A DNA stretch of 64,000 nucleotides, from the NCBI GenBank assembly GCA_965285935.1, contig OZ260665.1, positions 48,980,001-49,044,000 of the forward strand. Direction: 5' to 3'. The position numbers were made by a program, and so were the translations under genes. The notes beneath the pieces are model-generated. The model saw nothing but the letters and a program-made list of their open reading frames with translations. It was not told the DNA's origin and did not search any database. Source of the DNA: Ophelia neglecta. Lineage: Eukaryota. Numbering within the stretch: position 1 is the first letter of the stretch; every line of letters begins with the position of its first letter. Positions 3,001 to 59,180 of the stretch are shown in pieces.

Positions 3001-4358
3001 ATACTGCAAAACAAATGGTGTAGTAGAAAAAATACAGGCGCCTACTGCACCTAAAGTGAATATCAGCTGTTCCCAAAATACTTCACATAGCTGAGCTTAA
3101 TTGTTGCTAGCTGTTCTCAGTAATTTATTAAACATATTATTATTATTATTATTATCATCATAAATAATACTAAAACAGTATTTATTTACGTCATTTGCTT
3201 TAATGACATTTAATGTCGCATACTTCATATAAAAAGAACATGCTCACTAGCACTGTACATAAAGATAAAGTTACTTTTTTAATCCCCGAGTAGCAGCCTT
3301 TCATTGTTATTACACATGATTGCTCCAACAAATGTCTGCCCTATGCTTCCTTTTAAGTACTACTTTATGGTGAAAATTGCCACCGGAGAGACTCCGAAGC
3401 TCCTCCCAGGATCTTACCATGGTAATCTGCCAGTCAGTTTTACTAGATTGGTATTTAAGTGCCCATCCATGATAAATCGGGAAAGCAGAAATAAAGCTCT
3501 GTGGTAAACATTATATGTCAAAAGATCAAAGGTACTATCTATATATAGTCTAACATCAAGTATTGGGAAGCTACAGTTAATAAACACAATAATTCACTGA
3601 TCTCATTGGATGATCTTTGTGCTTTCACACCAATTTTGATCATGACAAATAAACAAGGCATTTAAAAATGCAACCCCCATTCTATCCATTGAAAGGGATA
3701 GTAAATATATTTTTCAGACAGTCCACCCCTGTTTAAGGATAAATAACTAGTCAAAACCCCTGTCCCTCTCCACCAAAATTTTGTTACTGCTCAAAACAGT
3801 TGAAATTGTCCAAAATGGCACAAAAGCAAAAGCTTGTCAAGAAAAGCACTCCTGTCTAAGAGTCTAAGCATATATAACCCGTCCCAGACCCAGCCCTTCC
3901 CCTACACACATTTTATTTGCTCAGCCATTAATGAAAAGCAAAAAAAAGTTGGCAAATAAACATATTCAGATGTCCACCAATAGTTAACCAGTTCATGTTA
4001 AGCCTATAATGCTACTTGCTTGTCAAAGTTAGCTCCATAGCTCTGATACTTTTTGCACAATCTTTTTAAGCAGCTTTTTGAACCATACTGCTGTAGATGA
4101 AGTAGTACAGGCACTACCCTGATGCCACCTGTCTCATACAAATTTCCCAGGCCTATAAACCATACCTGCGGAATATAGTTACTGGGGCCCTAATGACAAC
4201 AGCCTTAACAAAAGGCAAAGGCAGGGGGACGGCAGCAGCAGTGGCACAGGACATGGCCCAGTACATATCCCCCAAATTACGAGTGGGGGGCAATGACTGG
4301 TGTTTTTAGTCAATGATGACTATAAGTCTTGCTTACATTCCTGTCCAGCTTGACGAAA

Positions 4359-4482
4359 CCGGCAGTTCAATGGACTGTGGCTTCTTCAAAAGGCAGTTCA
4401 ATGGACTGTGGCTTCTTCAACTGGCAGTTCAATGGACTGTGGCTTCTTCAACCGGCAGTTGAATGGACAGTGGCTTCTTCAA
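4359..4482. repeat. 31-bp tandem repeat, 4 copies
   Basis: Unit ccggcagttcaatggactgtggcttcttcaa starts at 4359, 4390, 4421 and 4452. Confidence 0.93.
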
Positions 4483-7400
4483 CGGGATGATATATAGGCT
4501 TCCGTTATTGAAATGGGCATTACAGCAGAAATGAACAAGAATTTCCATAAAAGGCAAAAGAGACATAGGTTGTCAACACTGTGTTTTAGAACCAATGTAG
4601 GAGTCAATGAAATAACATATGTTAGGCGACATGTTGATCATTATCTGGTACTTGCACTTGACAAATGCTTATCATGTACAAAAAGTAGAGAATAATTATT
4701 AGTTTTATCCCTGGTGTCCTTATTGCATATTTGGTGTTTTTTCCTTGTAACTTCTCTGCCAGCTAAAATTGATAACTCCAGCCCGACTGTATGGATCAAC
4801 ATCAATGAAAAAATAGTATATGGGCTGTAACATGGGGACCTGGGCGTTTTGGGCCATAAATAAAATGTCCGGGGTGACTGTAAAAAATGCATCCAGAAAA
4901 CCTATGTTATAAAAATTACTCATTACAAAACAAACCAGGTCTATCAATGGACAAAATTAATCTGAAGTATTGGGTGACAATTTAATACAATTATTTTTTA
5001 TTTTTCTTATAATGAAAGTATAGGTAGTACTTCTAGTTCACTTCATACATTTATGTGAGAAATAGGAAATGTATGAAGTCATATCCATCTACATTCACTG
5101 CTTTTAGGGACATGATTAATAAACTTTTTTTCTGTTTCAAATAAAAAGTGTTTTTTACACTAATACGAGATTTTTGCCCCAGTGTGCATAAGCAACAACA
5201 ACCTTGTACAACTTCTCATTGAGGGGCTAACTTTAATGAACTGCACTTTAAATAAATATGTTAAAAGAAAGATATTGCAATCACTGAGACTTTCCAGTAT
5301 AGTGATACATCTCTTTTTGTCTGACAGAATGTATCCTTTTCAAACTGGACAACATGCATTATCAATAACCTTAACCTGCTGGTCATTTGATCCACCATAG
5401 TCTCTCTCTTGCCATTTTATAATTAATTGTCTGACCATCTGGCAACATTCCGCAGCACAGAATTTATCAACAGCAGCTTGACTCGCAAGGTGTGAATTGA
5501 ACGTAATAAATAATCACATACTAGTTCTTATAACTTCAGCTCTAGGTTATTCAATTAATATTTACTAGCATCATGTCTCTCTCTCAACATCTCTGTGAGA
5601 AGAAGTTTCCTGAATGAATAGGGTGTGAAAAAAAAGTCAAGTAAAATTGACTGAGGTGTGATGCACATAGTTTTGTTAGAAAGCAGAGGTACATTGTACA
5701 AACATAAATCTTCAACTAGAGTACCTCATCTTGTTGCTTAACACCAATTTGCCTGATTTTTTAGGCTTTTCAGGCAACAAATGTGAGAGATCCTTGGGGT
5801 TTTAACAGCAAATTTGATCTGTGTTTTCACACTCAATTTTCTTCAGAATATACATGTAACTAATACTGCAGTAAGAGTAACAATAAAAATAGGATTCTAG
5901 TATTTAATATCCTTTCTAAAGGAAGTTTCCATGCCATGCAGCATACTGTTACCAATGGGAAAACATAAATCAATGATAATTTGAGTTTTATCTTGAATGT
6001 TGAGAGATAAGATGAATTTGGTAGCAGGTTTTAGACAAATTCATAAAGCAGCATGCTCATTTGATATCAAGACATAAATAATAAATACCTATGGGTCAAC
6101 CTACACACAATAAACATTTGTTTGGTGAAGACCTTTAAAACATAAATTGTGCTCCACTGCTCTCATAGACAATAAAACCTGCTCAGCATGTGATTTGTGC
6201 CAGCCAACTGGTAATTCAACAGTATTTCAATCTTTTCACCAGTACACAGTAGATAGAGTACCAATGCACATTGAAAACTCTCTCTGAAGTGCACATAATA
6301 TCAAGTCTGTTCTAATCATAATATATCATAGGGTTTGCCACCTACACCCCTCCCACCCATCCCCCTGCCCCCTGTTTTGAAAATGGGTTGATCCATTTGT
6401 GTGTCTAGGGCATGTTATCAACAAAGCCTTATAGAGAGGACACAATTTGACTTTTATTAAGTTTATGTTGTTGTCTATAAATTAAATATTGCTAAAAAAT
6501 TATTTATTTCTAGCCAATGTATCTGTTCTATATTAAAAGTCGGTCCAACTTTCCAAAGAAAAGGGTCAGCAGAGACAGCAATTGAGGGTAGTAGCAGGGA
6601 CATACAAGGATGACTGTAGATGGTTTGGGGGAGGGGGGGATGCCTGGTTGGGGGTTCGATTAATCAATTAATAAATGGGAAGGGGGTATGATGTTGTGTA
6701 GCCATTAAGTTGTTGCCTGGGAAAAAAAACGTGCTGTAAGGAGACCCAGGGGGTTGAAAGTGCATGTAATGAACTTTCCAAACTATTAATGTTGATACAG
6801 GAAAACCTTGCCAATTTGGTGAGAGTCTCACTAATTGGAACATTTTCAGCTCGCGAGCCTTTCCCAGGTTAAGGTATATAACTTTACCCCCAACAATAGC
6901 GCAATCTCCCTCTTCTAGATCTAAGGATCACTAACTTGTACATTTTGTAATATATCGCTGACTAATATGACCTAGCCTATCATATCCCTGTTTTCAATGC
7001 AGGTAATAGCTGTAATGCTATCTAGCACTCATATATTTGATAATACCTGTATACAATGTCATGTATTTGTACCAACAGGCATTTTTATTTTTTCTTTGTG
7101 TTTAACAGGAATATCAATTGGGTAAAATGAGGATTTGGTCTTTAATTGTTTCTCATGGCATTAAAAAAATGATTTGTTCAGTCGAGTAATATAAGTTTCT
7201 TATATGGTAAGAAACATTATAGACCCCTTCATTGATTTAAATGTTATCCTTCTGATAAGATTTACCAGACAAGCATTTGCTTTGACCAATATGCTTTCTG
7301 ACCAGGTCTAAGTGCAATGCCCATTGATCTACAGTGATCTAATATTAGTTCATGAAAAATAGGACCATGGTATCCTTGAGTTATCCTAAAACTGTTAGAA

Positions 7401-9985: not shown

Positions 9986-11466
9986 GATATAGTGAATAAC
10001 AATTGTTGATTTGAGAATGCACCTACGTCTATAGTTAGCCAAATCATTATTTTAAATGTTAGTTTAAAAGGCTACCCTGGTTACGTTTATTGGAAATTGG
10101 CATAAAATTAAAAGTGGAAATTGCCAATTTTGTTTTCCCCTGGTCAGGAACATGATCCTACTGTTGAGTTTCAAATCAATCTTACTACCCTTTGTCAAGT
10201 TCCTGCACCACTTTTCTTCTTCATTTTTCCTTGTGAATTTTTTCCTTCTGTCTTGTCAATGACTTGTCCAAAACCTTTTGTAAACCAACACACCTCAATG
10301 ATACCAGGACCCTTTCAGGAGCTTCAAGAATCTCAGTTCATTTTTAATGTCAAAGTTCACTTATGCACAGTTAGCCTAAGGAAAATATGTGAAGGCAACT
10401 TAAGGCTGTCATTTTAAGGAAATATAGCAAGCACTGTTTATCATTAATTTGTCTCTAGAAAAAAATAATGAAACTGTTCAAGATCAGGACTGTTGTAAAT
10501 TATATAAAATTCAAGAATACATCTATAGTCTGATGATCTGATATTAACGCTCCTGAGCAGACTGCACCACTATAATCCATGATAACAATTTGTCAAAGAG
10601 AGGAGACCTTTAAAATGCATCAGGTATAACTACCGGTAATTTGGTGGTGCCAGGTGGTGAGGCCTTGAAGGATTGCCAGAGCCAGTGAGAAGTTCCAGGC
10701 ATTGTTACACCTGTCTCCTTAAATCAAAAGCTGACAGGGCAGCCCTGTCCCCCTAGAGCCCAAATCATGAAAAAACCATGTTTTGCATAATAAGTGAACA
10801 CAACTTCATTTGTAAAACTATCAGAGCATACCTTCCCATAGGTTTTTTTCAGTAATAGACATAAGTCAAGGACAAGCAGCATGGACATGTATACCTCCAT
10901 CACATTATGTAACCAATACATCCATGTAAGAGTATCTGGTGGCTTTTTTCTTTCTGGATCAACCCGGTGGTATCAAATATGCTGGTATTAGTGACAACCT
11001 AAAAGCTTATTAGTGATTTAGACATTATTGCACTAATGAAGTTGTCTTAACAAAATGGGGTCACAGAAAAACAACTAAAAATACCTCCGGTGCCTTGTGA
11101 ATGAAGAGAAGAGATCATGGAATGTTTTTAATACTTTAAATACCAACAGGCAAAGTAAAAATGCTCATTGAATAATACATTCCCTGCTTTAGGGAATGTG
11201 ATCTCACGTCATCAAAAAAGATGCCAATCTGCCTTGAAAGAAGTGATATCACATATAAAAGTAGTTTTGACTGAAAGTCTATATTTATGAGCACTCATTG
11301 GATACCTACAAATTAGGTTTCAAAAAATAACTTACAACTCTGGCAATTATGTTCTTGTCTGGATAAAGATGATCATTTTTTACATAGGGAAATGTATTTT
11401 TGTCAAAGTTTCTATAAATATCTCAGTATTATAGCACACACATTGCAGACAATGTTTTGAGACAAG

Positions 11467-12105
11467 TATAACCGTGTTGATTTAAGTTAATTGTTGTTGG
11501 CCAACCTTATGGGAAGATTATATCTAGTATTTAGTTTAGTTATTGCTATGTGCCAGGAGTCTGTGAAGACAATGGGTTATCTGCTTTAATCGTGATCTGC
11601 CATCATCAGTGGCATATCTGGCATGTTGGCACTGGATAAGCTGGGATTGTAATTATTATATCTTCTCTTTTATCATTATTATTATTATCGTTTGTATGTA
11701 ACAGCTATGGTGGCAATGCAACCAGATTGGCTCCGATTAGGTAGATGTCAATTGCTGTCTGTATTTATATTAATTGCCATTGCTTGTAATAATTGTTTAG
11801 TGTGACACCTGGCAGTGCCCTATATAAACTGTGGTTAGATACTAGTGCGGTAGACTGGATTTCACCTCTGCAGGACACACATCTCTGGATCCCAGAGACA
11901 GGACCGGCCACTAGCCAGGACCTCCAGCCTTTAGCTCGGATTGCACCTGCACTGGACTGCCAGCTCTGTCTGTGACTCGTTTTCTATGCTTAATATCCAG
12001 TATTGTATATAAGCTACATCCCCAATAAAGTAAGTGATCAGTAGGAAGCCTCGAGTTGTTGTTATAACCTGGAATTGGAGCGGGACGCAAGGGACCCCGG
12101 TCATA
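11467..12105 (+). repeat. 5' LTR (639 bp)
   Basis: By eye identical to 13492-14130 except T11727 vs C13752. Contains TATATAAA (11821-11828) and AATAAA (12024-12029). Confidence 0.96.
11821..11828 (+). promoter_or_regulatory. LTR TATA box
   Basis: ccc-TATATAAA-c lies about 200 bp upstream of the LTR AATAAA, the usual U3-R-U5 layout. Confidence 0.7.
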
Positions 12106-12107
12106 TT

Positions 12108-12125
12108 TGGTGTGAGACGCGGGTT
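12108..12125 (+). other. Primer-binding site (tRNA-Leu-like)
   Basis: TGGTGTGAGACGCGGGTT starts 2 nt after the LTR end. It begins with TGG (complement of CCA) and resembles the complement of the tRNA-Leu 3' end (TGGTGTCAGAAGTGGGATTCGAAC) with several mismatches. Confidence 0.8.
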
Positions 12126-12281
12126 TGAACACTTTTCAGCTGTTCAAATCCCCAAACCTCTTTCTACAGAAGCGAGCAGACTCCACCATCACAGTGTTCT
12201 ACATTCCCAAAACTTCATCTACATCAGATTTAGACAATTCAAGTATTTTGTAAGTACTATCGGACCATTATTATAGCAAAC

Positions 12282-13418
12282 ATGGTTGGTCACATTGCAA
12301 CCTCCCAAAACCACTGCCACAGTCACTGTCAAGGAGCTGTCCCTGCATGCTGCAATGGTCACCACTGCTGTGTGCCTCAAAGTCTTAATGTGCCATGTGT
12401 GAACCAAGTTGTGTTGAGGAAAAAGAAGTCACCATCTACAGTAAGAAGAGATATTGCCAGAAAGCAAGAGTTTATGAAAAGGAAGTTTCAAACGAACAAC
12501 AGCCAAAACAAAATAAGCGAAAAAGCAGGTCAGAAATTAAAAGAGGTCATAGCTTCAAAGAATATAGAGATTGAAACGTTGAACCAGATACAGCAAAGTG
12601 CAAAAGTGACCAATGAAGCGACAGTCCAGGAATTGAAAAACCTGCTGAGGAACCAGAAAACTGTGATCGAGCACCTACAAGAAGACAAAGCAACAAGTCT
12701 AAAAGAAGTAAGCATATTAAAAGAAGAACTGGAATTTTTTCGGATGGGCTCAGCATCAGTGGCCTCCCTGCAAGAACAACTAGAAGAAGGCAAAACCAAG
12801 CATGAATCCTACTGTAAATCGCTCCATGACACACTAGACCATTGCAAGCAGGAGATGGCTAAACAAGGAAATAGCATCCAAAGTCTGACCACAGATCTCA
12901 ACGCCCTTATAACCAAAGACCAAAAATCTTTGTCAACAATACAACTTTTAACCACCAATGTGCAAGAACTAAGGCAGGTATTAGAGAATGATAAAGAATT
13001 TGAACGCTTGTTTAAAAATATAAAAGAATTTGATACAGAAATTTTAAAATATAGAGACGATGCTGATTATGAAAGTAAACATTTAACCTCTTTGTATAAC
13101 AAACTTATGGGAGAATGGGTATATTTTATGTCAAACTGGGATTTTATCCATTGTAACCATAAATCAAGCTATGAAAAACCATTGTGTATTTTGGATGAAG
13201 TGACACAAAATCTAGAGTATGTGAACGTGTTGGGTAACTCTTACCACAAATATTATCTGGTAGAGCCCACTTGTGGCTGTCCTCCAAAATGGTATGATGA
13301 TGTGCAAATGAGTAATCAAAAACTTATCAATGAATATCAAAAAAGGTATGATACCAAAATTCGGAAAAACAGTCGTTATTGTTCTGCGAAACCAATTTTT
13401 ACCAATACAAAAGTCTAG
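12282..13418 (+). CDS. 378-aa protein of unknown family: Cys/His-rich N-terminus, basic RKKKSPSTVRR motif, long coiled coil, aromatic/Cys-containing C-terminal domain
   Basis: By far the longest ORF in the window, with a strong context (gcaaacATGG), filling about 82% of the 1,386-bp internal region. No CCHC knuckle, D(S/T)G protease, YxDD RT or integrase motif seen. Confidence 0.85.
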   Translation: MVGHIATSQNHCHSHCQGAVPACCNGHHCCVPQSLNVPCVNQVVLRKKKSPSTVRRDIARKQEFMKRKFQTNNSQNKISEKAGQKLKEVIASKNIEIETLNQIQQSAKVTNEATVQELKNLLRNQKTVIEHLQEDKATSLKEVSILKEELEFFRMGSASVASLQEQLEEGKTKHESYCKSLHDTLDHCKQEMAKQGNSIQSLTTDLNALITKDQKSLSTIQLLTTNVQELRQVLENDKEFERLFKNIKEFDTEILKYRDDADYESKHLTSLYNKLMGEWVYFMSNWDFIHCNHKSSYEKPLCILDEVTQNLEYVNVLGNSYHKYYLVEPTCGCPPKWYDDVQMSNQKLINEYQKRYDTKIRKNSRYCSAKPIFTNTKV

Positions 13419-13476
13419 TTAATGCACTGAAAATTTTAGTTCAAAATTGATTTTTAGACACGGGAGTGTCTTGCTT

Positions 13477-13487
13477 GAAAAGAGAGG
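13477..13487 (+). other. Polypurine tract
   Basis: GAAAAGAGAGG lies 4 nt upstream of the 3' LTR. Confidence 0.85.
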
Positions 13488-13491
13488 CATA

Positions 13492-14130
13492 TATAACCGT
13501 GTTGATTTAAGTTAATTGTTGTTGGCCAACCTTATGGGAAGATTATATCTAGTATTTAGTTTAGTTATTGCTATGTGCCAGGAGTCTGTGAAGACAATGG
13601 GTTATCTGCTTTAATCGTGATCTGCCATCATCAGTGGCATATCTGGCATGTTGGCACTGGATAAGCTGGGATTGTAATTATTATATCTTCTCTTTTATCA
13701 TTATTATTATTATCGTTTGTATGTAACAGCTATGGTGGCAATGCAACCAGACTGGCTCCGATTAGGTAGATGTCAATTGCTGTCTGTATTTATATTAATT
13801 GCCATTGCTTGTAATAATTGTTTAGTGTGACACCTGGCAGTGCCCTATATAAACTGTGGTTAGATACTAGTGCGGTAGACTGGATTTCACCTCTGCAGGA
13901 CACACATCTCTGGATCCCAGAGACAGGACCGGCCACTAGCCAGGACCTCCAGCCTTTAGCTCGGATTGCACCTGCACTGGACTGCCAGCTCTGTCTGTGA
14001 CTCGTTTTCTATGCTTAATATCCAGTATTGTATATAAGCTACATCCCCAATAAAGTAAGTGATCAGTAGGAAGCCTCGAGTTGTTGTTATAACCTGGAAT
14101 TGGAGCGGGACGCAAGGGACCCCGGTCATA
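13492..14130 (+). repeat. 3' LTR (639 bp)
   Basis: Copy of the 5' LTR at an offset of 2025 bp; AATAAA at 14049-14054. Confidence 0.96.
14049..14054 (+). terminator. Polyadenylation signal of the 3' LTR
   Basis: AATAAA followed about 25 nt later by GT-rich gttgttgtt. Confidence 0.7.
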
Positions 14131-17100
14131 CAAGCATTGAACTTCTTACTGGTGCCTTCCCTTTTCATATGACTACCTAACCCTTTTAAATTTATACACA
14201 ATTTTCCCACTCCAACATTTTGAGTTTTAAATAAAACAAATTGTCATCATCAAATTCTATTAATATGACATTTTCATGGCAACTGGCTAAGTTTGGCTCA
14301 TTTTATCCACAGGAATCAGGATAAGGAAAACATACCATCTATGGACATGTACATCATCAGAAATATTAACAATCTTAGTATCAGATTTCTGACTCTCTGT
14401 TATGATATGTTACATATGTATGGTACACTACTTCACTTAGCATGTTTTTTAAGTGCACTTTCAGTCTCAAGAATTTACATGATTGACATTCTACAGGATT
14501 ACGTTTCTCTAAATATCCATTGGTTTATTGTGTTTGGCCTTGATAAAAATTTACCTGGAAGCAAAGATCTCTACAGGTTCTCCAATAATTATCATGCAAT
14601 ACCAATGTTTATAGGACATGTTAAATATAAAGTGCAAAGTGATCTACTTTGTGATTATTCGAAAGTATCATATTTTGATAAAACTACATTACATTATCCA
14701 AATAGACTCATTTCATTATGCAGGAGACCTACGGGCTCCATGGTATAAAAAACAGATTAAATTTGAAATATGTATGTTAGAAACACAGAGCCAACATTGC
14801 TTGGGGCAAAACTTGTAGTCACACATAAAACACTACACAAGTTCCACTTATGTTCAAATCAGCTATTTTTGTTTTGGTATTTATTTTTATAACCTAGATA
14901 CAAAGCCATACACATAGATATTCCTTTTACATAAGAAAGTAATCAATTTGAACCAACATAATATATGGTAAGGACCCACTTAATAGATGGTAACAAAGCT
15001 CCAACTCTCAAGGAGATCATGATACTTCCTAATTACAACTTCTTTCTTATCTTGATCCCACTTTCATTCCTTAATTACTCCAATGAACTTCCTTGGATAA
15101 TTCCAATATAAAACCAAGTTCTGGTCCATCAATCCCTTGCCGTCAGTCTGCCTTGTTTTAGGTCCCTCTTTTGCTTTTGTAGCTGTGGTGTAGCCTAATT
15201 CCCAAACTGGTTAAGCCTATCTATACTCCCCCCCCCCTCCTATTAAAATGCTCTCATCCTGTTTTGGTAAACAAGTGTGCCACATCATCTAAACAAAGTG
15301 GCACAATGTAAGAAATGCAGGTGTTGGGGTAGCTCCAACAGGATCATAGTTGGAGCTTAGCCAGAAGTAAAACTTACAGATATCACAAAAAACACTGGAA
15401 ATATGGCTGCTATATAGACATAGACAGAAGGTGTATTACATGAATATTGCTTAGCTTTGTGAGGTAGCTAGCCAGCTTAAAATTAGCTAGCAATAAAAAA
15501 TGAATCCTGAATCCTCTATAAGCATTGTTAGGTTTCTTACCTGAAGCTAGTCTATTGTAACTGTGTGTGACTAGCTTGGTTGTTTGTGCTATGATATTAC
15601 ACACAAAGGGAGTTTATAAGATTATTTACCAACAGCAGTTAATTACTTTAAAAAGTGTGTTAGAAAATATACTGACACTGTTACTTTGTTGCAGAAGCCA
15701 GGGAACACGGTGTGTATGTTGAAATATATTTTAATTTTCATCATCCTATTTTACACTACCCCAGACTCTTAACAAAACACTTTTTTATGGGCGGACAGAC
15801 AGAACAGCCTGTCATTTTAAAACTGAACTTCACAGGAATAGATGTGTCATTTTGACTTAACTAAGTACCTAGGACAATTGATTTTACATCACATGGGATC
15901 AGTTCTATTCAAGACAATCAGCATGTCAGTAATTATCCAATACAAACAGCAACCACCCCCAGAGAAAAAGCACTTGTAAAACTATGCCTCCTGATGGTTT
16001 TCTGATATCTCCTTACACCAGGAGCAATCCATCTCACTCTAGTTTCTATAGTGAACAGTTTCTTGCTGGGTGAAAAAGGAGAGGAGACTATAGAATAAAG
16101 CTGGCTAGGGAGAGAAAATGTTTTAGCAACATAGAAAAATATCGCCCTCAGGCTTCTAGACAGAATGGCTAGGAACATTATGACACCATTTTGATGTGAT
16201 GGTTTCTAGTGATATTTCACTCCCCTAGCAGCTGTTATCTTTCACTAGGTAATCCTCCTTCATTGCATCTTCACTGCACTGGGTAAGGCTAGGTGGAAGA
16301 CAGCCAAGAAACAATATTTCCTTAGTGTGTGATTGATTGGAAGTTTTTTTATACACACAACAATCATGGCCAAAGCATTAGCCAGTGATTTATGTGCTGC
16401 ATATGTATTAGCCTACACCCAAAATACAATTATCTCACATAATAAAACAGAATGGGATCAAAACATGCCAAGCGCAAGGCTTTAAAGTAAAGTTAAGATT
16501 GCCCATCAACCAGCCCAATATGAAAATGGATGGTTTTCCCACCCTTCAGATTAATGATAAAGAAGCCATATAAAATTGCAAAAGCTTGTTACATTTTGTT
16601 CATAAGCTCAGATGTATCAGCCTAATAGAGGAAGTCTAATCTCCTCCCTCAGACTGTATACTTTCAAGCTTAGATAAGAAGCTTGAAGATGACTCAGGAG
16701 GGATACTGATGGAGAGGGATGATTCTTTTATTGGGACACCCACTGGGAAATGCTATCAGACATCTTGCCATACTGCACATTACTGTCCATCACCTAACAT
16801 CATCCCCTCTGCACTGAAACTCAACAGTGAGCACAAATGTGGAATCTGTAGCATGCTCAAAGGTATTACTCAGGTACACATGCTATTCACCAGTTTACAC
16901 ATAGGGCACATCAGGTCTCCACATGAATAAACACACAGTACCCTTGACTCCATTAGAAAAAGTGAATAGCACCTCAAGCTCAGAATGAAAAAAAGTGAAG
17001 TTTTGCATGTTTTATTGGGACAGAACATTGTTAAATATTCACATATGTAATTGTAAAATATCACTTCTTAGTGATAAATAGATTCTGCTGGTTGAGATAT

Positions 17101-19880: not shown

Positions 19881-21506
19881 AAAAAAACAATCCAAACCAG
19901 ATTTTGGCATTTTCTACCGACCCAAAACTGAGAACAGAAAAACAATGCTAGGGTCTCCTGTTTAAGGTGGTAAACAGTTTCAAAGCTCCTGGTGGCCATA
20001 TTGTTTCAGAGGGCTGACCAAAAACATAATTTCTAAGTGTTATACCTTCTTTTTTAAAGCTACGCTATCTGTACGAAATTGGTGACAGGCTAGAACCTGC
20101 TCTTTCACAGTACTCAAGTCCAACCAGACACACAGGCACATATACTATAACCAGGCTCACCCCAGACATACAAGCTTCTAGAATACAGAAAACGGCATTA
20201 TATTAAAAATAATGCAGATAAAGCCCCGCAATATGGACCAGCTTACTAATATTTGATGCAGATGTAGCCCCTAGGCAGGTTTTGCATCCTGTGGTAGAGA
20301 TTTACAACTAGCAAAACTACTGGTGTCATTGGCAGAAGGAACACCAGACAAAAATATGAACAAAAATTTGTACTCTAGCATTGACTGACAGACCAATAGA
20401 GTAGTGTAGCCATGTTACTACATGTATCTTATAGTATAATGGAGACCTCATGAAGAAGACTGTCTGTAAAAAGGTTCCAGCTATATGCTTCAACTAACAT
20501 TTATTGCTCATACCCCATTGAACAACAGATGTATAGCCTGAGAGAAAATCGTGTAAAAAGCAATTAAATTTTGTCCAAGTTCCAGTCAATGCTCTCTTAC
20601 TTTGCACTCCTATTGCACAAGAGATTTCAAGATCAACTGGCATTAATTTAACTATTGGGGTGAGGCCAGCTGTCAACAAGTTGGCAAAGTTAATGGTTTC
20701 CAGACATCACTGAGTGCTAATTGTTTTGAGGTTGAGTTATCTTGGAGAAAAAACTATGGTTTTATAATATAACAACACTACTCTGGAATAAAACCTCAGT
20801 AAAACCCATTTGTGTAAAGTGCCACTCCCAATGCAAATTCTTACATGTTTCTTTTAACCACAGTCTTCATTCCATTCGTGATTATCTATGAAGGTTTTAC
20901 TTGGCCAAAGTAAAATCTCCTGAGCTGATCTCAAGTAACTGATAACCCCACACACTTTTAAAAGATAACAACATTCCTTAATTTACAGTGAATGAAAACA
21001 AGTCCCCTTCAAGCTGTCAACCTTATGGCAGTACAGGCACTGCCAATTTAAGTTTTTCATCTACTCTCTACCCATTTGCTGCAAGTCCACCACCATAAAC
21101 GGGTAAAGGCACCTGCCACTACTAAAGCTTGCTTAACATTAAACCTGGGCTATATACATGTATATGCAAAACTCTCAAATTTGCAAGAAAAAGCCAAGTA
21201 TAAATGTCTGTACATGTCACCCAGGGCACAAGAGTGAGTTCAACACATTTCTTACTTATTGTAAAAAAGTATGCATAGTGTAAAATTGAAATAATAGTAG
21301 ACATCCTGTGAAAGTTATCTTGAAATTGGACTTCCTTATTTTCACTGTAAATGGGTCTGCCTGTTGTAGTTTTCTTTAAGCTCATGGACTTTGTTATATC
21401 TTTCTTATGTTTCCTTTTCTTCTGCCAAGAAAAACTTGGACCTACTCTACTGGTATATAATAGAATTCCCATATTGTTGGGTAAAGAGAGCAACTATAAT
21501 ACTTAC

Positions 21507-21641
21507 ATAGTTGTTTTTGAGATCAGTATGAGTATGTTCGATGCCATCGTCCAGTATGGTAATGACCACTCCTCGCCCTGTGTAGCCTCTCTCCCATGCT
21601 TTTATCACATTCATGTCAAAACCTCCCTCAGCTCCACCATG
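21507..21641 (-). CDS. Furin-2/PCSK5-like convertase, coding exon 4 (start of S8 catalytic domain, catalytic Asp)
   Basis: Reads gatgtag|[45 protein letters not shown]|gtaagt (135 nt). DMNV..AW..GYTG.GVV..ILDDG is diagnostic, and the GGA-x-x-G-x-DMNV start resembles invertebrate furin-2. I did not find the next exon (D..AS.D...HGTRCAGE) in 1-21506, so the gene probably continues left of the window. Confidence 0.97.
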
Positions 21642-23249
21642 CTACATCAAAACAAGAAACATGATTAATTCAATAAAAAATTTGCAGTAACCAAGAGGAC
21701 CTTGCCGGCAGTTATGATTTCAATCTTGGTCATTTTTAGTTAAAAGGAAAATAAAAATTTCATTTCTTCATCCTTGTCAGTCATGTTCTTCAAACCAATA
21801 TCAGTTTTAGTTATTTAATTGTGTGTTTAAAATGATTTTCTGACTACTCTGGTTATTATGTAAATCTGTAATAAATGGCCTGCCATTGCCTTCCCTCAAG
21901 TCACCCTGCATTAGGACAGGGCTTTTAAACGATACCTCTGAGGATGACATACAGAGAAAATTATGAATATTAGAGGAGCTGTGCAGAGTGTATCTCAGCC
22001 ACCATATACATGTACATGTACAGTCATAGTCAGATTACCTAGAAGTGGAGCTAAGTCACCAGATAGTGACACATGACTGGTATCATAGGGCCACTCATGT
22101 CAGGCCACGCCAGCTTTATATCTTTGTTTCGTGCTATTTGGAGCTAACTTCACACGTTTGACTCTTTAGCCTTGTAGAGGCACCAAAGGACTGACACAAG
22201 TGGAGTTAAGTGGAACTTGTGAGCCTGAATTTTGCCAAATATCAGTCAACCAATATACTCTACACTCCCTTGAAATACAAATGGTATTTCTCAGAAAACA
22301 GGTACCGGTACTTAGAAGAGCTCTTGACTTACTAATGTTTTTTAAAGACATAATTTACTGTACATTTTTCAAGCCAAATATTTGAATATGGCAAAGTAAA
22401 GTAGAAATATAATATTATGCACTACCAATCAAATTCAAACTATTGTATTTATTGATTTATTATTATTTTTAATAACCTAGTTACCGGTATAGCAATTATC
22501 ATGTATGTCTGCAGCCATTTTGATAAACAAAACTTGTATGCTAGATGGACATGTTGTTTAAGTCAATAATACTTAATAATATGAATGTTGTATAATTTTT
22601 CATAATGTTGCCAAAGGACTAGAACACATATACATATTTGTCAAATACATTGGAATATCAGCAATCATTTCTTCATTCAGTCATAGATATAGATGTATGG
22701 ATTATACATATCTATGGATCTGGCTATAATCAGATAAAGTGCCAATTTCCAGCCCCATATGATTCTGGCCAGCAAAATGAGCTGTTGGTAGTTTGTATAG
22801 GTAACTCCTCTATTTTCCTGCCAAGGCCGCCTAGGTCTGAGATCTCTGTCTGTACCTCAATTGATTCCCATTAAACACAAACTGTTTTTTCATGTCATGA
22901 TCATGTGTTTTTCCTCTGATATTTGATTTGGCTCCATTTCATAGTATTATTGTTGCAATGCAATATTTTGTATGGCACATGCCTGGGTTAATGATGGGTA
23001 GTTGTGGTCGCTCCTTCCTAACCTGATCTTATGCTGCGCCAGAGACTGTTGCCTGGCATTAGGGCAGTGGTTAATAGCAAATAGGGTAATAAATACCATT
23101 GTTGCCCGGGTATTCTGCTCTCTATAGAATACCTCTTTCCCAGAAAATTTGTTTTGTCCTTATATTCATGCAAGCTTTCATAGCACATCACCCACTCTGG
23201 TGCTGAAATGATAAATGTCTTTAGGATGTATCAAGGTGATAATACTTAC

Positions 23250-23366
23250 CAGGTACCATGTCTTAGGCCACAGTGCATCTCTGAAGTGTGGCTGCCATCC
23301 CCCTTCAGGGACAACATAATCCCTTTTAACTCGCTTTTGGACAATCTGCTGCTCTACCCAGGACAC
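23250..23366 (-). CDS. Furin-2/PCSK5-like convertase, coding exon 3 (autocatalytic KRVKR|D site)
   Basis: Reads tttcag|VSWVEQQIVQKRVKRDYVVPEGGWQPHFRDALWPKTWYL|gtaagt (117 nt). Contains V-x-W-x-EQQ...R-x-K-R|D and F-x-D-x-x-W-x-x-x-WYL. It lies inside supplied ORF 23178..23402. Confidence 0.97.
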
Positions 23367-23870
23367 CTGAAAGGCACAAAACGGAGAACCATTAGAATGC
23401 AATGATAATAAAAAGGCTCAACAACACAACAACACAGCAGTATTGCACACATAATGTTAGCCCATTTGTGTTTGTGCACATAAGTGTTTCTTTCATCTGT
23501 AGAAAAAAAATTGCTGGAATGGAGATCATTGTGTTTAGACTACAGACAATAAGCCACAATATTATAAATATATTTTACAACCAACACCCTTTGTGAATTT
23601 TGCTCATTGTGAATTTAACAACTTAAAAGACAAGCAAGCATTCGTTGCCAAGATAATGAGCCCTGAGCAAGCTTCAAGAGGGATTCACTGACAAAAATAG
23701 AGGCTGATAGTAAATTGTGTTTGGTGGGGACATTCTTTTATTTGGATAAGCTGCACTCAAAGTTGTAATAATATAAGCATGGTCAAATAACCGAAACATT
23801 GGGACAACAGTTTATATCAGAGATAACATATCCCTACTGATCAGGTCTGACTTAATGGGATTTCTCTTAA

Positions 23871-36300: not shown

Positions 36301-37155
36301 GCAAACCATCCAAAAGCATTAGTCAATTTCAACAACAGATTTCCCATAAGTGGCCCAACTAAAATCCTTGGCAGTAAAGGATGTAATTATATCACCAATT
36401 AAATGAAGGTAACATGCTGTAAAGAAATGGTGGACACATTTTATTTGATATCAAGAGCAAGAAATCAAGGGAAGAATTCATCTTGAATGTCAAGAATTTT
36501 CCGTTCCCTCGGGTCAAATTAAGGATTTCTGCACTCATTCATTTGGGCAATCTGTGGGGCTGCTTGATTTCAATTTCAGTAATTCAATGATTCCTGTGAG
36601 TCCAGACACAAATCAATAGAACTTGTTGGAAACTCAAATAAGAAACTTGAGGAAAGGATTCAACTAAAGATAAGCAACATGGTCACAAGGAGACAAATCC
36701 CTCCCTAATCAGGAGAAACATTTCCCCATTATTACACTAAACTGAGTGCAGCTAATGGTAGCTTGTGATCTGAAGGGACATGGAGTAATTACTAATATTC
36801 CATCCTTAACCCTTTTGAACATCATTGTGATGAGCCATGAATTACATGAACAAAGTCAAGTACTGAAAGCCTTCACAAACGGGATGGTTAGACGCCAAGT
36901 CTGACCTCCTGAAAGATTGATCTAATGGCTTTCTGCATTTAACTGTCAACTCTGAACATGGCTCTAGGACAAAAATGTCTGTGACACACTGATGAATTGT
37001 GGTTGGCGGGAGCTTGTATTTTAGGACATTGCTTGACTTAATTACAAGAGACAAATCAATACAATTACTTTTATTAATATCATTGACTACAATAGCATGA
37101 GTATCAATCATACCATAATATGACTGCATGCTCGTTCTTCTAGAACACATTACTG

Positions 37156-38400
37156 GCAGACATAACTAAGAAGTGTAGTGGTAGACATAAGCATGTGGAG
37201 AAGTGGCTGGCATAACTAAGTAATGTAGGGGTAGACATAATCAAGTAGAGTAGTGGCAGACATAGCTAAGTTACATAGGGGTAGACATAATCAAGTAGAG
37301 TAGGGGCAGACATAGCTAAGTAATGTAGGGGTGGACATAATGAAGTAGAATAGTGGCAGACTTAGCTAAGTAATGTTGGGGTAGACATAATCAAGTAGAG
37401 TAGTGGCAGACATAGCTAAGTAATGTAGGGGTGGACATAATCAAGTAGAGTAGTGGCAGACATAACTAAGTAATGTAGGGGTAGACATAATCAAGAAGAG
37501 TAGTGGCAGACATAGCTAAGTAATGTAGGGGTGGACATAATCAAGTAGAGTAGTGGCAGACATAACTAAGTAATGTAGGGGTAGACAAAATCAAGTAGAG
37601 TAGTGGAAGACATAGCTAAGTTACATAGGGGTAGACATAATCAAGTAGAGTAGGGGCAGACATAGCTAAGTAATGTAGGGGTGGACATAATGAAGTAGAA
37701 TAGTGGCAGACTTAGCTAAGTAATGTTGGGGTAGACATAATCAAGTAGAGTAGTGGCAGACATAGCTAAGTAATGTAGGGGTGGACATAATCAAGTAGAG
37801 TAGTGGCAGACATAACTAAGTAATGTAGGGGTAGACAAAATCAAGTAGAGTAGTGGAAGACATAGCTAAGTTACATAGGGGTAGACATAATCAAGTAGAG
37901 TAGGGGCAGACATAGCTAAGTAATGTAGGGGTGGACATAATGAAGTAGAATAGTGGCAGACATAGCTAAGAAATGTTGGTGTAGACATGATCAAGTAGAG
38001 TAGTGGCAGACATAGCTAAGTTACATAGGGGTAGACATAATCAAGTAGAGTAGGGGCAGACATAGCTAAGTAATGTAGGGGTGGACATAATGAAGTAGAA
38101 TAGTGGCAGACATAGCTAAGTAATGTTGGGGTAGGCATAATCAAGTAGGGTAGAGGCAGACATAGCTAAGTTATGTAGGGGTAGACATAATCAAGTAGAG
38201 TAGTGGCAGACATAGCTAATTAATGTAGGGGTGGACATAATGAAGTAGAATAGTGGCAGACATAGCTAAGTAATGTTGGGGTAGACATAATCAAGTAGAG
38301 TAGTTGCAGACACAACCAAGTAGAGTAGTGGCAGACATAACTATGGAGAGAAGTGGCAGACACAACCAAGTAGAGTAATTGTTGACATAACCAAGTAGAG
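37156..38400. repeat. Minisatellite, 50-bp unit made of two related 25-mers, about 21 full units plus degenerate edges
   Basis: Consensus gtagacataatcaagtagagtagtg-gcagacatagctaagtaatgtaggg, in exact 50-bp register from 37231 to 38280. Confidence 0.97.
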
Positions 38401-39981: not shown

Positions 39982-40322
39982 GGGGGGGGGGGGGGAGAGA
40001 GAGATAAGCTCCATTTTGTTTAGACGGGGAAGTCCTGATTTGCTTCAGAATATCCAACCCATGCATGTAAATCATACCTAACAAATATGTACCTGTGCAT
40101 GTTAATTTTTCGGCTCTGGATTATCCATCCTTGATACGAATTGCCCGATTAAGCACCAACCGATGAAAGGGTTTGCCAAAAAAGGACCCACCCATGTAAG
40201 GCTTTGCCAAAAAAGGGCCCCATCCATGTAAATCCCGGCCCAGAAAAAACTACCCACGCAAGTGACATGTCCCCATATACCAATATATGGAGCTCCCCAC
40301 CCTCACCCCCACCCCTGTCCCG
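39982..40322. mobile_element. MITE-like element with G-run / C-run ends
   Basis: Left (G)n...agctccattttgtttagacgggg versus right-end reverse complement ggggagctccatatattggtatatgggg; internal 2x duplication of ggtttgccaaaaaagg.ccca.ccatgtaa at about 40169-40231. Confidence 0.5.
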
Positions 40323-58359: not shown

Positions 58360-58521
58360 CTTTCCCAGGTTCCTAAATCCATGAAGAGCCGCAATGTGAT
58401 TGGCGATGTTTTCTCCTCCTTTGATTTCTACTGCCCATTTATTAAGGAAAACATTAGCAATAGATCTTCCATGTAGACATATTAACACCAATAAAAATTT
58501 GGTCCATTGATCATATGCCAT
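58360..58521 (-). CDS. Furin-2/PCSK5-like proprotein convertase, coding exon 1 (signal peptide and start of prodomain)
   Basis: Translates MAYDQWTKFLLVLICLHGRSIANVFLNKWAVEIKGGENIANHIAALHGFRNLGK (54 aa). A hydrophobic signal peptide is followed by the N-x-WAV-x-I-x-GG...A...HGF-x-NLG pattern of kexin/furin (S8B) prodomains. ATG context is aagtcATGG; the donor is AAG|gtgaga, phase 0. Confidence 0.93.
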
Positions 58522-59180
58522 GACTTTGGCAAGACCGGCGGCAGTTGCTGCGGGTTGCTCTGCTGACAGATGCTGACTCCAGTTTGACAGTTGCTTGCAG
58601 TTTGGCTCTACTGGGATGCGGATTGCCTTCGGCTCAGGCTCCTCGCGTGTTCATCCGTCAGGCGCACCCAGAAATCGCCGACATGGGCACCCGCTTTCCT
58701 AGATTTCACTCATTTCTTAGGCTATTCAGGAGACACGATACAAAATGTTTATCCTGGCAGAACGGCGGTGCTGTACTCCCCGATTTAACGTCAGTCATAG
58801 TTGCGTGTTGGTTGCAAACATCCTTCTGCTACCAGCTGTCAAACAGCGGCTGGAAAACAGAGCTCTCTACGCCGGAGGTAGGAATACTATATACACACCG
58901 GGCTGTGTGGCGGAGTATAGCGTACTATGGCTTCAGTCAATCGGACACGCGCCAGCTCGAGGCCATATGTATCTGAACAGCACCGCCAGTGGACAACCTG
59001 CGGAGCTCGACCGGCGCTTGAGATCCGCAGATAAATTCACGAATTGTACATTTAAAACTCGATTCCATTCAAGCGCTTTAGAAGGCCGAATTAAAAGGTC
59101 CTTCATTGGCAAAGGCTGGGCACATTATAGGCTTGACCTTCCGCTCCGCGAGTCCCGCTCTTATAAGCTTTTAATCGCTT
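58522..59180 (-). promoter_or_regulatory. CpG-rich promoter / 5' UTR region of the convertase gene
   Basis: Abrupt rise in GC content and CpG density immediately upstream of the ATG, against a strongly CpG-depleted gene body. Confidence 0.7.

What the first reader, a model, noticed from the sequence alone, without database searches (positions are those of the whole stretch)
11467..14130. Young, intact LTR element carrying only one unknown protein (no gag/pol): a candidate gene-carrying non-autonomous retroelement family
Seen: all cis signals for LTR retrotransposition are present (two 639-bp LTRs with one mismatch, TSD, PBS, PPT, TATA box, polyA signal). The 1.39-kb interior is a short leader, one clean 378-codon ORF and a short trailer. 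Known: non-autonomous LTR elements (TRIM/LARD) usually have non-coding interiors or decayed gag/pol. Inference: the element is mobilised in trans by a helper (probably Gypsy-like, given the 4-bp TSD and Leu-type PBS). The ORF's tight fit suggests it is maintained by selection, for example as a host-manipulation, anti-silencing or helper-hijacking factor.
Basis: partly seen in the sequence, partly recalled or inferred. Interest (0 to 1): 0.9.

Follow-up and report, generated by a model that had tools for sequence, protein, structure and literature searches.

The report
Small LTR element carrying one gene
A very recently inserted 2.7-kb retrovirus-like mobile element has no replication enzymes of its own but carries one intact, conserved gene for a coiled-coil protein of an unnamed family; this helper-dependent lifestyle is known in vertebrates, but the gene it carries is unfamiliar.

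Summary
Two 639-bp LTRs (11467-12105, 13492-14130) differ at one base. They are flanked by a CAAG duplication and enclose a PBS-like site, a purine tract and one 378-codon ORF, by far the longest in the 64-kb window. No gag capsid, pol or env is detectable by sequence or predicted fold.

The ORF is a real gene. Three protein clusters from marine and other metagenomes are 24-31% identical over the full length. All share a Cys/His-rich basic N-terminus, a long coiled coil and a small C-terminal domain with invariant His/Cys/Trp. One relative's contig shows LTR end, PBS, ORF, purine tract, LTR and an unrelated flank, and no pol. This is therefore an old family of small single-gene LTR elements. 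Variation among copies of one relative points to purifying selection (dN/dS about 0.2-0.4).

The C-terminal domain is predicted, at medium confidence, to have a chromodomain-like fold. No sequence evidence supports that.

Single-ORF, pol-less LTR elements are already known: zebrafish BHIKHARI, chicken ENS-1/ERNI, Xenopus 1a11 and xretpos. I rate this a new variant of a known kind. The helper, the tRNA primer type, the function and the host species remain unknown.

The parts
11463..11466 (.). Left copy of the target-site duplication (CAAG; possibly ACAAG from 11462)
11467..12105 (+). 5' LTR, 639 bp, termini TATAAC...GTCATA
   Evidence: one mismatch to the 3' LTR, at 11727
11821..11827 (+). TATA-like box in the LTR (same motif in the 3' LTR at 13846-13852)
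   Evidence: read
12024..12029 (+). AATAAA poly(A) signal in the LTR (same motif in the 3' LTR at 14049-14054), 76 nt before the LTR end
   Evidence: relatives also have AATAAA 45-80 nt before the TGGTG site
12108..12130 (+). Primer-binding-site-like stretch starting TGGTG, 2 nt after the LTR; reads as the complement of a tRNA 3' end and T-arm
   Evidence: Relatives carry TGGTG directly at, or 1 nt after, the inferred LTR end. The tRNA isotype was not determined.
12106..12281 (+). Leader, 176 nt; contains a GTAAGT hexamer at 12250-12255
12282..13418 (+). Single intact ORF, 378 codons plus stop; no breaks
12312..12452 (+). N-terminal Cys/His cluster (residues 11-39) and Lys/Arg-rich stretch (residues 46-57), conserved in all four family proteins
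   Evidence: low model confidence here
12432..12986 (+). Long helical, coiled-coil-like region (residues 51-235); length varies between relatives
   Evidence: helices 51-106 and 112-235; pLDDT 82-93 for residues 120-230
13158..13394 (+). C-terminal domain (residues 293-371): three strands plus a helix, chromodomain-like in the model. Invariant H293, Y324, C331, C333, W337, C367.
   Evidence: no Pfam or PDB sequence match
13419..13491 (+). Trailer, 73 nt, with a small hairpin (13457-13470)
13477..13487 (+). Polypurine tract, 11 nt, 4 nt upstream of the 3' LTR
   Evidence: In relatives the purine run abuts the inferred LTR start.
13492..14130 (+). 3' LTR, 639 bp
14131..14134 (.). Right copy of the target-site duplication (CAAG)

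Best explanation
This is a recently integrated, helper-dependent (non-autonomous) LTR retroelement. It belongs to an old family whose members have lost gag capsid, pol and env and keep one gene.

Shown:
- The complete set of cis signals is present: LTRs with TATA and poly(A) signals, a PBS-like site, a purine tract and a target-site duplication.
- There are no enzyme genes.
- The ORF is conserved at full length in other genomes inside the same kind of LTR unit.

Inferred:
- An RNA of about 2.2 kb running from the 5' LTR to the 3' LTR serves as both mRNA and template.
- Reverse transcriptase and integrase come in trans from an unidentified autonomous element.
- The ORF product serves the element itself as an oligomeric adaptor. 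The coiled coil would multimerise it. The N-terminal Cys/His and basic stretch, together with the C-terminal chromodomain-like, probably metal-stabilised domain, would bind nucleic acid, chromatin or the helper's particle. In that role it would stand in for part of what Gag does (or, in chromoviruses, the integrase chromodomain), giving its own RNA or cDNA access to the helper machinery or to chromatin.
For: Structure: LTR identity 638/639, TSD, PBS-like site, PPT, TATA and AATAAA. The ORF is far beyond chance.

No enzymes: there are no Gag, RT, IN or Env families in Pfam. There is nothing in PDB by sequence. Foldseek against PDB and BFVD gives no capsid or envelope match. No transmembrane-like segment is present. 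The interior has room for only this ORF.

Family: phmmer over 1.84 billion representatives finds P0002, P0003 and P0004 (E 7e-14 to 4e-4), and P0003 and P0004 match across nearly the whole query. Reciprocal tblastn gives E 1e-12 to 1e-20. The alignment has 41 invariant columns.

Same element type in relatives: L009 shows LTR end | TGGTG site, ORF, purine run | 516-bp LTR | unrelated flank. L001 and L004-L011 are circular permutations of a 1.7-kb LTR-plus-interior unit. L002 and L003 show AATAAA, then a TGGTG site, a leader and the ORF.

Selection: between subgroups of the Tara-type relative, dN/dS is 0.22-0.36. Single-site variable codons split 9 synonymous to 7 non-synonymous, against a neutral synonymous share of 0.20 (p = 0.0013). 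The N- and C-terminal domains are almost free of amino-acid change.

Fold: a long helix is followed by three strands and a helix. Both the whole-protein and the domain-only models return chromodomains and chromoshadow domains almost exclusively (probability up to 1.0, TM 0.65-0.75 relative to the target).

Precedent: gag-only non-autonomous ERVs are young and active in zebrafish and chicken (PMC12067270).
Against: - Only one copy is in the window, and I could not search the source genome. Family size, insertion polymorphism and the helper are unknown.
- No autonomous element with matching LTR ends or PBS, or with a related protein, turned up in any collection.
- The functional part is inference. 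The models have medium confidence (pLDDT 66-68, four sequences). Foldseek E-values are weak (0.04-1). The Pfam Chromo models do not match.
- Within one subgroup of the relatives dN/dS is about 1.
- The relatives' contigs are short-read metagenome assemblies that may be mosaics.
- The LTR ends are not TG...CA, and the purine tract is 4 nt from the LTR.
Confidence: 0.55

Rival explanations
1. The ORF is a strongly diverged or truncated Gag. It would be the N-terminal coiled-coil part of the Gag of a foamy-like, lokiretrovirus-like or ERV-L-like helper. The element would then be an ordinary gag-only deletion derivative of the BHIKHARI or ENS-1 type.
For: Bik-1 Gag and ERNI have an extended N-terminal coiled coil. 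Their elements lack pol and env, are young and occur in vertebrates (PMC12067270). Some lokiretroviruses carry a coiled-coil 'smc'-like region (PMC7947760). The window ORF is mostly a long helix, and the window has vertebrate-like CpG depletion.
Against: The model shows no capsid-like helical bundle after the coiled coil; instead there is a small strand-rich domain. Pfam, PDB and BFVD give no Gag or capsid hit. No Gly-rich or zinc-knuckle tail is present. I could not compare directly with those Gag proteins.
Confidence: 0.22
2. The ORF is an ancient in-frame deletion chimera of a chromovirus-type Ty3/Gypsy element. An N-terminal piece of Gag would be fused to the chromodomain that ends the integrase, which lies just before the purine tract in such elements.
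For: The chromodomain-like fold sits at the very C-terminus, 73 nt before the 3' LTR. A BFVD hit to a virophage integrase (rank 10, probability 0.66) fits a domain of this kind. A 4-5 bp TSD is compatible.
Against: No sequence match to Chromo, rve or Gag models. The N-terminal two thirds do not look like a Gypsy Gag. The same architecture is kept in four lineages at 24-40% identity, so any such deletion is old and the product has since evolved as a gene in its own right.
Confidence: 0.1
3. The protein mainly serves the host: a developmental or chromatin gene carried on a mobile element, as proposed for Bik-1, Bik-2 and ERNI. In that case it is maintained by host-level selection rather than for the element's spread.
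For: [quoted passage not shown] Xenopus 1a11 and xretpos(L) show stage-specific embryonic expression (PMC4585706).
Against: No expression or phenotype data exist for this family. This reading does not exclude the best explanation. The copy here looks like a fresh insertion, probably antisense in an intron, not a fixed locus.
Confidence: 0.08
4. The ORF is a passenger: a host gene captured between LTRs, or a chance-preserved ORF, with no role and no selection.
For: The copy is so young that its intactness alone proves nothing (1 LTR mismatch).
Against: Full-length relatives at 24-31% identity all lie in LTR units. No host-gene relative was found among 1.84 billion representatives. Copies show an excess of synonymous change.
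Confidence: 0.04

Closest known systems
BHIKHARI-1 and BHIKHARI-2 (crestin) of zebrafish: non-autonomous lokiretrovirus-derived ERVs that encode only Gag (PMC12067270)
   Same: LTR-flanked, with no pol or env. One long ORF beginning with an extended coiled coil. Young copies with near-identical LTRs and perfect TSDs. Vertebrate host.
   Different: Bik-1 Gag is 617 aa and has a capsid domain and a Gly-rich tail. Here the protein is 378 aa, with no capsid fold predicted, a Cys/His-rich N-terminus and a chromodomain-like C-terminal domain. The element is also much smaller (2.66 kb). Sequence relation not testable here.
ENS-1/ERNI of chicken (non-autonomous variant of ENS-3/Soprano, sister to ERV-L) (PMC12067270)
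   Same: Non-autonomous LTR element with one ORF. The protein has a long N-terminal coiled coil. The family is very young.
   Different: ERNI is predicted to have a retroviral capsid fold and a disordered C-terminus. Its autonomous partner (ENS-3) is known, whereas none is known here.
Xenopus laevis 1a11, xretpos(L) and lambda-olt 2-1 (PMC4585706)
   Same: LTR elements with PBS and PPT, one ORF and no pol homology. They occur at tens to hundreds of copies.
   Different: 1a11 encodes a 71-kDa Gag-like protein, and xretpos(L) is reported to use tRNA-Arg. Four of the six published qPCR primers for these elements find no match in the window at up to 3 mismatches, so this is not a close copy. A distant relation was not testable.
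TRIM, LARD and TR-GAG classes of non-autonomous plant LTR retrotransposons (PMC13570524, PMC6022998)
   Same: Small LTR elements that keep cis signals and depend on a helper. TR-GAG elements keep a single gag ORF.
   Different: TRIM and LARD interiors are non-coding. TR-GAG carries a recognisable Gag. Those are plant elements, whereas this is an animal genome and the ORF is not recognisable as Gag.
Chromoviruses (Ty3/Gypsy elements whose integrase ends in a chromodomain) (own knowledge)
   Same: A chromodomain-type fold encoded at the 3' end of the coding region of an LTR element, just before the purine tract. It could tether to chromatin.
   Different: In chromoviruses the domain is part of a full integrase in an autonomous element and matches the Chromo sequence family. 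Here it follows a coiled coil, has invariant Cys/His and gives no sequence match.

Membership tests
LTR retroelement (structural definition) | Two direct long terminal repeats of near-identical sequence | tested here: met
   639 bp each, 638/639 identical
LTR retroelement (structural definition) | Target-site duplication of 4-6 bp directly outside the LTRs | tested here: met
   CAAG on both sides; 5 bp (ACAAG) equally possible
LTR retroelement (structural definition) | tRNA primer-binding site next to the 5' LTR and a polypurine tract next to the 3' LTR | tested here: met
   A TGGTG... stretch starts 2 nt after the LTR and reads as the complement of a tRNA 3' end. An 11-nt purine run lies 4 nt before the 3' LTR. 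Relatives have the same layout. The tRNA isotype was not determined.
LTR retroelement (structural definition) | TG...CA dinucleotide termini | tested here: not met
   Termini are TA...TA (TATAAC...GTCATA). Inferred LTR starts in relatives are TAT or TGT, with ends in ATA. Non-TG/CA ends occur in a minority of LTR elements (own knowledge).
Autonomous LTR retrotransposon or endogenous retrovirus | Genes for capsid-type Gag, protease, reverse transcriptase/RNase H and integrase | tested here: not met
   The interior is 1386 bp with one 378-codon ORF. No such Pfam family matches at E up to 10. Foldseek gives no such fold.
TRIM / LARD | Interior without coding capacity | tested here: not met
   The ORF is intact and conserved in relatives
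Gag-only non-autonomous ERVs (BHIKHARI, ENS-1/ERNI, 1a11 type) | Single ORF between LTRs, no pol or env | tested here: met
Gag-only non-autonomous ERVs (BHIKHARI, ENS-1/ERNI, 1a11 type) | Extended N-terminal coiled coil | tested here: met
   Helices 51-106 and 112-235 in the model, pLDDT up to 93
Gag-only non-autonomous ERVs (BHIKHARI, ENS-1/ERNI, 1a11 type) | Retroviral capsid fold in the ORF product | tested here: not met
   After the coiled coil come two short helices, then three strands and a helix. There is no capsid hit in PDB or BFVD. Caveat: the model has medium confidence.
Gag-only non-autonomous ERVs (BHIKHARI, ENS-1/ERNI, 1a11 type) | Sequence relation to those proteins, or LTR and PBS shared with a known autonomous partner | not testable with these tools
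   I had no permitted route to the comparator sequences. None came back as a named hit. Four of the six published X. laevis qPCR primers do not match.
Chromodomain superfamily | Three-stranded antiparallel sheet packed against a C-terminal helix | tested here: inconclusive
   The fold is predicted in both models, and the Foldseek top lists are almost all chromo or chromoshadow domains (probability 0.9-1.0, TM 0.65-0.75 per target). However, E-values are 0.04-1 and pLDDT is 66-68 from only 4 sequences.
Chromodomain superfamily | Match to the Chromo sequence profiles | tested here: not met
   No Chromo family at E up to 10 for the whole protein or for the four C-terminal domains. The PDB profile search found no chromodomain.
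Chromodomain superfamily | Aromatic cage that binds methyl-lysine | not tested
Invariant Tyr and Trp exist, but their placement is unknown.
Retroviral Env | Signal peptide and membrane-spanning segment | tested here: not met
   Maximum 19-residue hydropathy is 0.1-1.05 in all four proteins

The most novel reading that the evidence does not exclude
This is an old, widely spread lineage of miniature LTR retroelements, found from this CpG-depleted animal genome to organisms sampled in ocean plankton metagenomes. It would have replaced the whole gag-pol set by one self-made protein that is not a Gag. That protein would be an oligomeric, metal-binding reader with a chromodomain-type fold. The element would use it to tether itself to chromatin or to interfere with chromatin-based silencing while borrowing enzymes from a helper. 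That would make it a parasite-of-a-parasite with its own chromatin effector.
Probability: 0.3. Interest if true: 0.8.

Novelty: new variant of a known kind. Interest (0 to 1): 0.6.

Why it matters
Helper-dependent LTR elements that keep one gene are turning out to be young, active and sometimes developmentally important in vertebrates (BHIKHARI, ENS-1/ERNI). In every described case the retained gene is a recognisable Gag.

Here the retained gene shows no capsid by sequence or fold. It is conserved across very distant genomes in the same miniature element, and it may end in a chromatin-reader-type domain. If confirmed, it would show a second solution to the question of what a non-autonomous retroelement must encode for itself.

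It would also add an unnamed protein family to retroelement annotation. Such families are usually masked before gene calling and are therefore nearly absent from protein databases: I found 3 clusters among 1.84 billion representatives.

Tried and rejected
- Sequence searches of the ORF gave only chance-level coiled-coil hits: Pfam at E up to 10, PDB phmmer, and a PDB profile search of the C-terminal domain.
- Word-indexed protein searches added nothing real. The single ORF found nothing. The family alignment found only P0003 plus a spurious coiled-coil protein, P0015. P0002 found only itself.
- The best phmmer hit, P0001, is a 7162-aa insect 'perilipin-4' matched 16 times by a 44-residue stretch. 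I rejected it as a repeat or amphipathic-helix artefact.
- The exact-protein look-up of the window ORF was not on record.
- Locus scans with the family alignment found nothing: metagenome contigs twice and viral contigs once. This means no pol-bearing relative and no extra members.
- Rfam on the window and on the element gave nothing real, and there are no tRNA genes in the window. The tRNA matching the PBS therefore stayed unidentified. A literature string search for the PBS also failed.
- BLASTN and TBLASTN of the LTR, the interior and the family proteins against the window found no second copy or solo LTR.
- Pfam on 100 other ORFs of the window found no RT, integrase or transposase, so no helper lies nearby. 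It found only convertase exons.
- Four published qPCR primers (two for xretpos(L), one for lambda-olt 2-1, one for 1a11) gave no match.
- I rejected a tandem gene array as the explanation for the relatives' permuted contigs, because L009 runs from the LTR end into unrelated flank.
- I rejected Env because there is no hydrophobic segment.
Full report
**1. Observation**

The repeat search and a base-by-base comparison confirm two direct repeats of 639 bp, at 11467-12105 and 13492-14130. They differ only at 11727/13752. CAAG lies directly outside both ends. Because the last LTR base is A and the left flank reads ACAAG, a 5-bp duplication with 638-bp LTRs is equally possible. The '4-bp TSD' therefore cannot be used to name the helper.

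The termini read TATAAC...GTCATA rather than TG...CA. The other cis signals are as follows:
- Two bases after the 5' LTR, a stretch beginning TGGTG (12108-12130) reads as the complement of a tRNA 3' end and T-arm.
- An 11-nt purine run (13477-13487) lies 4 nt before the 3' LTR.
- The LTR holds TATATAA (11821) and AATAAA (12024).
- The interior is 1386 bp: a 176-nt leader, one ORF (12282-13418, 378 codons) and a 73-nt trailer.

The ORF is the longest in the window by a factor of 2.5. The next longest is 147 aa, and the longest in 200 shuffles is 200 aa. The expected number of 394-codon open stretches is about 6e-9. One difference in 639 bp means the insertion is very young. My estimate is a few hundred thousand years at typical vertebrate rates of 1-3e-9 per site per year, but the species, and so the rate, is unknown.

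**2. What the element lacks**

- No Pfam family for Gag, protease, RT, RNase H, integrase or Env matches the ORF at E up to 10.
- PDB by sequence gives only chance coiled-coil hits.
- None of the four family proteins has a membrane-spanning-like segment.
- No second copy, solo LTR or relative of the protein lies elsewhere in the window.
- Among 100 other ORFs of the window scanned with Pfam, none is an RT, integrase or transposase.

The element cannot be autonomous.

**3. The ORF is a member of a real, conserved family**

An exhaustive phmmer search of 1.84 billion representatives returned four hits. One, P0001, is a repeat artefact: an insect 'perilipin-4' matched 16 times by one 44-residue stretch. 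The other three are real relatives. P0003 and P0004 match across nearly the whole query:
- P0002: 284 aa.
- P0003: 381 aa as called, with the likely start Met giving about 339 aa.
- P0004: 345 aa.

They are 24-31% identical to the window protein and 33-40% identical to each other. Reciprocal tblastn against the window gives E 1e-12 to 1e-20. The alignment has 41 invariant columns. These are concentrated in an N-terminal run of His and Cys followed by a Lys/Arg-rich stretch, and in the last 90 or so residues. Invariant residues there include H293, Y324, C331, C333, P334, P335, W337 and C367 in window numbering. The helical middle varies in length.

None of the relatives carries a name. They come from ENA and Logan assemblies of marine metagenomes, including Tara Oceans, and from one JGI metagenome. 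The word-indexed searches and the locus scans added no further members.

**4. The relatives sit in the same kind of element**

- L009 (2466 bp) reads in this order: end of an LTR with AATAAA, a TGGTG... site, a 241-nt leader, the 284-codon ORF, a 79-nt trailer ending in a purine run, and a 516-bp LTR. Then 688 bp of unrelated flank follows. That flank begins exactly where the 5' copy continues into the TGGTG site. This is an LTR-interior-LTR element of about 2.2 kb without pol.
- L001 and L004-L011 are circular permutations of the same 1.7-kb LTR-plus-interior unit. This is expected when short reads from a multi-copy LTR family are assembled.
- L002 and L003 (P0003 and P0004) show the same order: AATAAA, a TGGTG site 45-80 nt later, a leader and the ORF. 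In L002 a trailer, a purine run and an inferred 330-bp LTR follow.

The PBS-like sites all begin TGGTG but differ after that. The LTRs of the different lineages do not align. The architecture is therefore old, while the non-coding DNA has turned over.

**5. Selection**

I compared the natural copies pairwise and built no consensus. All 10 ORF copies read in the Tara-type relative are intact, with zero stops and zero frameshifts. This is ascertainment-biased, because they were found through called proteins.
- Between subgroups, dN/dS is 0.22-0.36 at dS of about 0.06. Within one subgroup it is about 1, based on very few changes.
- By site counts, single-site variable codons split 9 synonymous to 7 non-synonymous, where neutrality predicts a synonymous share of 0.20 (p = 0.0013). 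Six more codons carry more than one change.
- Amino-acid changes fall mostly in the coiled coil. The N-terminal 60 residues have 6 synonymous to 1 non-synonymous change, and the C-terminal 94 residues have 1 to 0.

Together with the full-length conservation at 24-31% identity, this shows long-term purifying selection on the two terminal domains. One unexplained point remains. In these contigs the LTR and the trailer are almost invariant (0-1 mismatch), while the ORF differs at up to 24 sites and the leader is highly variable. The variants also occur in different combinations. Either the assemblies are mosaics or the lineages recombine.

**6. What the protein looks like**

AlphaFold2 with the four-sequence alignment gives medium confidence (mean pLDDT 66). 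Residues 1-49 are unmodelled. Helices span 51-106 and 112-235 (pLDDT 82-93 over 120-230), followed by two short helices. Three strands (300-310, 321-329, 336-339) and a helix (346-362) complete the model.

Foldseek against PDB returns chromodomains and chromoshadow domains almost exclusively: CBX, HP1, CHD1, SUV39H1, Rhino and cpSRP43. E-values are 0.04-0.6 and probability reaches 0.97. The C-terminal domain modelled alone (pLDDT 68) gives the same list, with TM 0.65-0.75 relative to the roughly 60-residue targets. Against predicted viral structures there is no Gag or Env match. One of the better hits is a virophage integrase.

Sequence profiles do not support a chromodomain. I therefore treat 'chromodomain-like fold' as a lead at about even odds, not as membership. 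The invariant His and three Cys suggest a bound metal, which is inference. No capsid-type helical bundle is predicted.

**7. Comparison with what is known**

Pol-less LTR elements with a single ORF are documented in vertebrates:
- Zebrafish BHIKHARI-1 and -2 (crestin) are non-autonomous lokiretrovirus relatives that encode only a Gag with an N-terminal coiled coil, a capsid domain and a Gly-rich tail. They have polymorphic young insertions.
- Chicken ENS-1 encodes ERNI, a coiled coil plus capsid (PMC12067270).
- Xenopus 1a11 encodes a 71-kDa Gag-like protein. Xenopus xretpos(L) and lambda-olt 2-1 also lack pol homology (PMC4585706).
- Plants have TR-GAG elements beside the non-coding TRIM and LARD classes (PMC13570524, PMC6022998).

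The present element shares the lifestyle and the coiled coil. It differs in its small size, in the lack of a predicted capsid domain, and in its conserved Cys/His N-terminus and chromo-like C-terminal domain. Four of the six published X. laevis qPCR primers do not match the window, which excludes only close identity. I could not compare the ORF with Bik Gag, ERNI, 1a11 or the xretpos ORF. None came back as a named hit, and fetching sequences of animal proviruses by accession is barred. I left that step out.

**8. Mechanism**

*Shown:* a complete cis set, no enzymes, and a conserved ORF.

*Inferred:*
- Transcription runs from about 30 nt after the TATA box (about 11850) to about 20 nt after the AATAAA of the 3' LTR (about 14070). 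This gives an RNA of about 2.2 kb that is both mRNA and template.
- Priming occurs at the TGGTG site and at the purine tract.
- Integration by a helper's integrase produces the 4-5-bp duplication.
- The protein acts for the element as an oligomeric adaptor. It would bind nucleic acid, chromatin or helper particles through its terminal domains.

The rivals are listed with their tests: a truncated Gag of a coiled-coil-Gag ERV, a chimera of Gag and the integrase chromodomain, a host-serving gene, and a neutral passenger.

**9. Context**

The window is AT-rich (37% G+C) with CpG observed/expected of 0.22, while the element itself has 0.41. This fits a heavily methylated, vertebrate-like genome and a young insert. 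The species could not be identified.

I do not take the window for human, for three reasons:
- The convertase exons are only distantly similar to the mammalian PC1/3 pro-domain in PDB.
- The element's relatives are from aquatic metagenomes.
- Rfam reported no matches anywhere in the window.

On the minus strand lie exons of a proprotein convertase gene:
- The start Met, signal peptide and beginning of the pro-domain are at about 58350-58520.
- The end of the pro-domain, with a basic cleavage motif, lies in 23181-23417.
- The first 24 positions of the S8 catalytic domain lie in 21450-21641.

I did not find the remaining exons in the ORFs tested at lower coordinates. The element probably lies antisense in a large intron of this gene, but this is unproven.

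**10. Conduct**

Scripts printed counts only. No gene of the element or of its relatives is broken, so there are no breaks to count.

One slip to report. None was entered in a tool, a note or this report, and no conclusion rests on them.

Noticed in passing
window 58348-58650 (-), 23181-23417 (-), 21450-21641 (-): These are exons of a proprotein convertase (subtilisin/kexin-type, S8) gene on the minus strand. The first holds the start Met, signal peptide and start of the pro-domain (PF16470, E 1.5e-6; closest PDB match is the PC1/3 pro-domain). The second holds the end of the pro-domain with a basic cleavage motif. The third holds the first 24 positions of Peptidase_S8 (E 6e-5). At least about 35 kb separates the first two. 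The LTR element probably lies antisense in a downstream intron.
   Followed up: partly
window 37154-38400: A satellite-like tandem array: a 50-bp unit made of two diverged 25-bp halves, about 25 copies, 87% matches. The region has a strong positive GC skew (0.15-0.22).
   Followed up: no
window 4357-4483; 40151-40231: Two short tandem repeats with 31-bp units (4.1 and 2.6 copies).
   Followed up: no
window 12030-12035 and 12250-12255: Two GTAAGT hexamers, which match the splice-donor consensus. One lies directly after the AATAAA in the LTR. The other lies in the leader, 27 nt before the ATG, where retroviruses have their major splice donor. No downstream gene exists to splice to, so this may be chance.
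   Followed up: no
L009:1224-1243 and L002:221-239; window 13457-13470: A block of about 20 nt just upstream of the purine tract is nearly identical in two lineages whose proteins are only about 33% identical and whose LTRs do not align. The window has a small hairpin at the same place. This is a possible shared cis element.
   Followed up: partly
L009:1779-2466: The flank of the Tara-type element contains the LTR end, a TGGTG-type site and the leader start of a second, diverged element of the same family. Several subfamilies therefore coexist and cluster in that genome.
   Followed up: no
L001, L004-L011 against L009: The LTR (516 bp) and trailer are almost invariant between contigs (0-1 mismatch). 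The ORF differs at up to 24 sites and the leader is only 85-100% identical, with indels. ORF and leader variants occur in different combinations. Either the assemblies are mosaics, or lineages recombine and LTRs are homogenised.
   Followed up: partly
window 11467-14130 versus the rest: CpG observed/expected is 0.41 in the element against 0.22 in the surrounding 61 kb. This fits a recent arrival that has not yet decayed by methylation-driven mutation.
   Followed up: no
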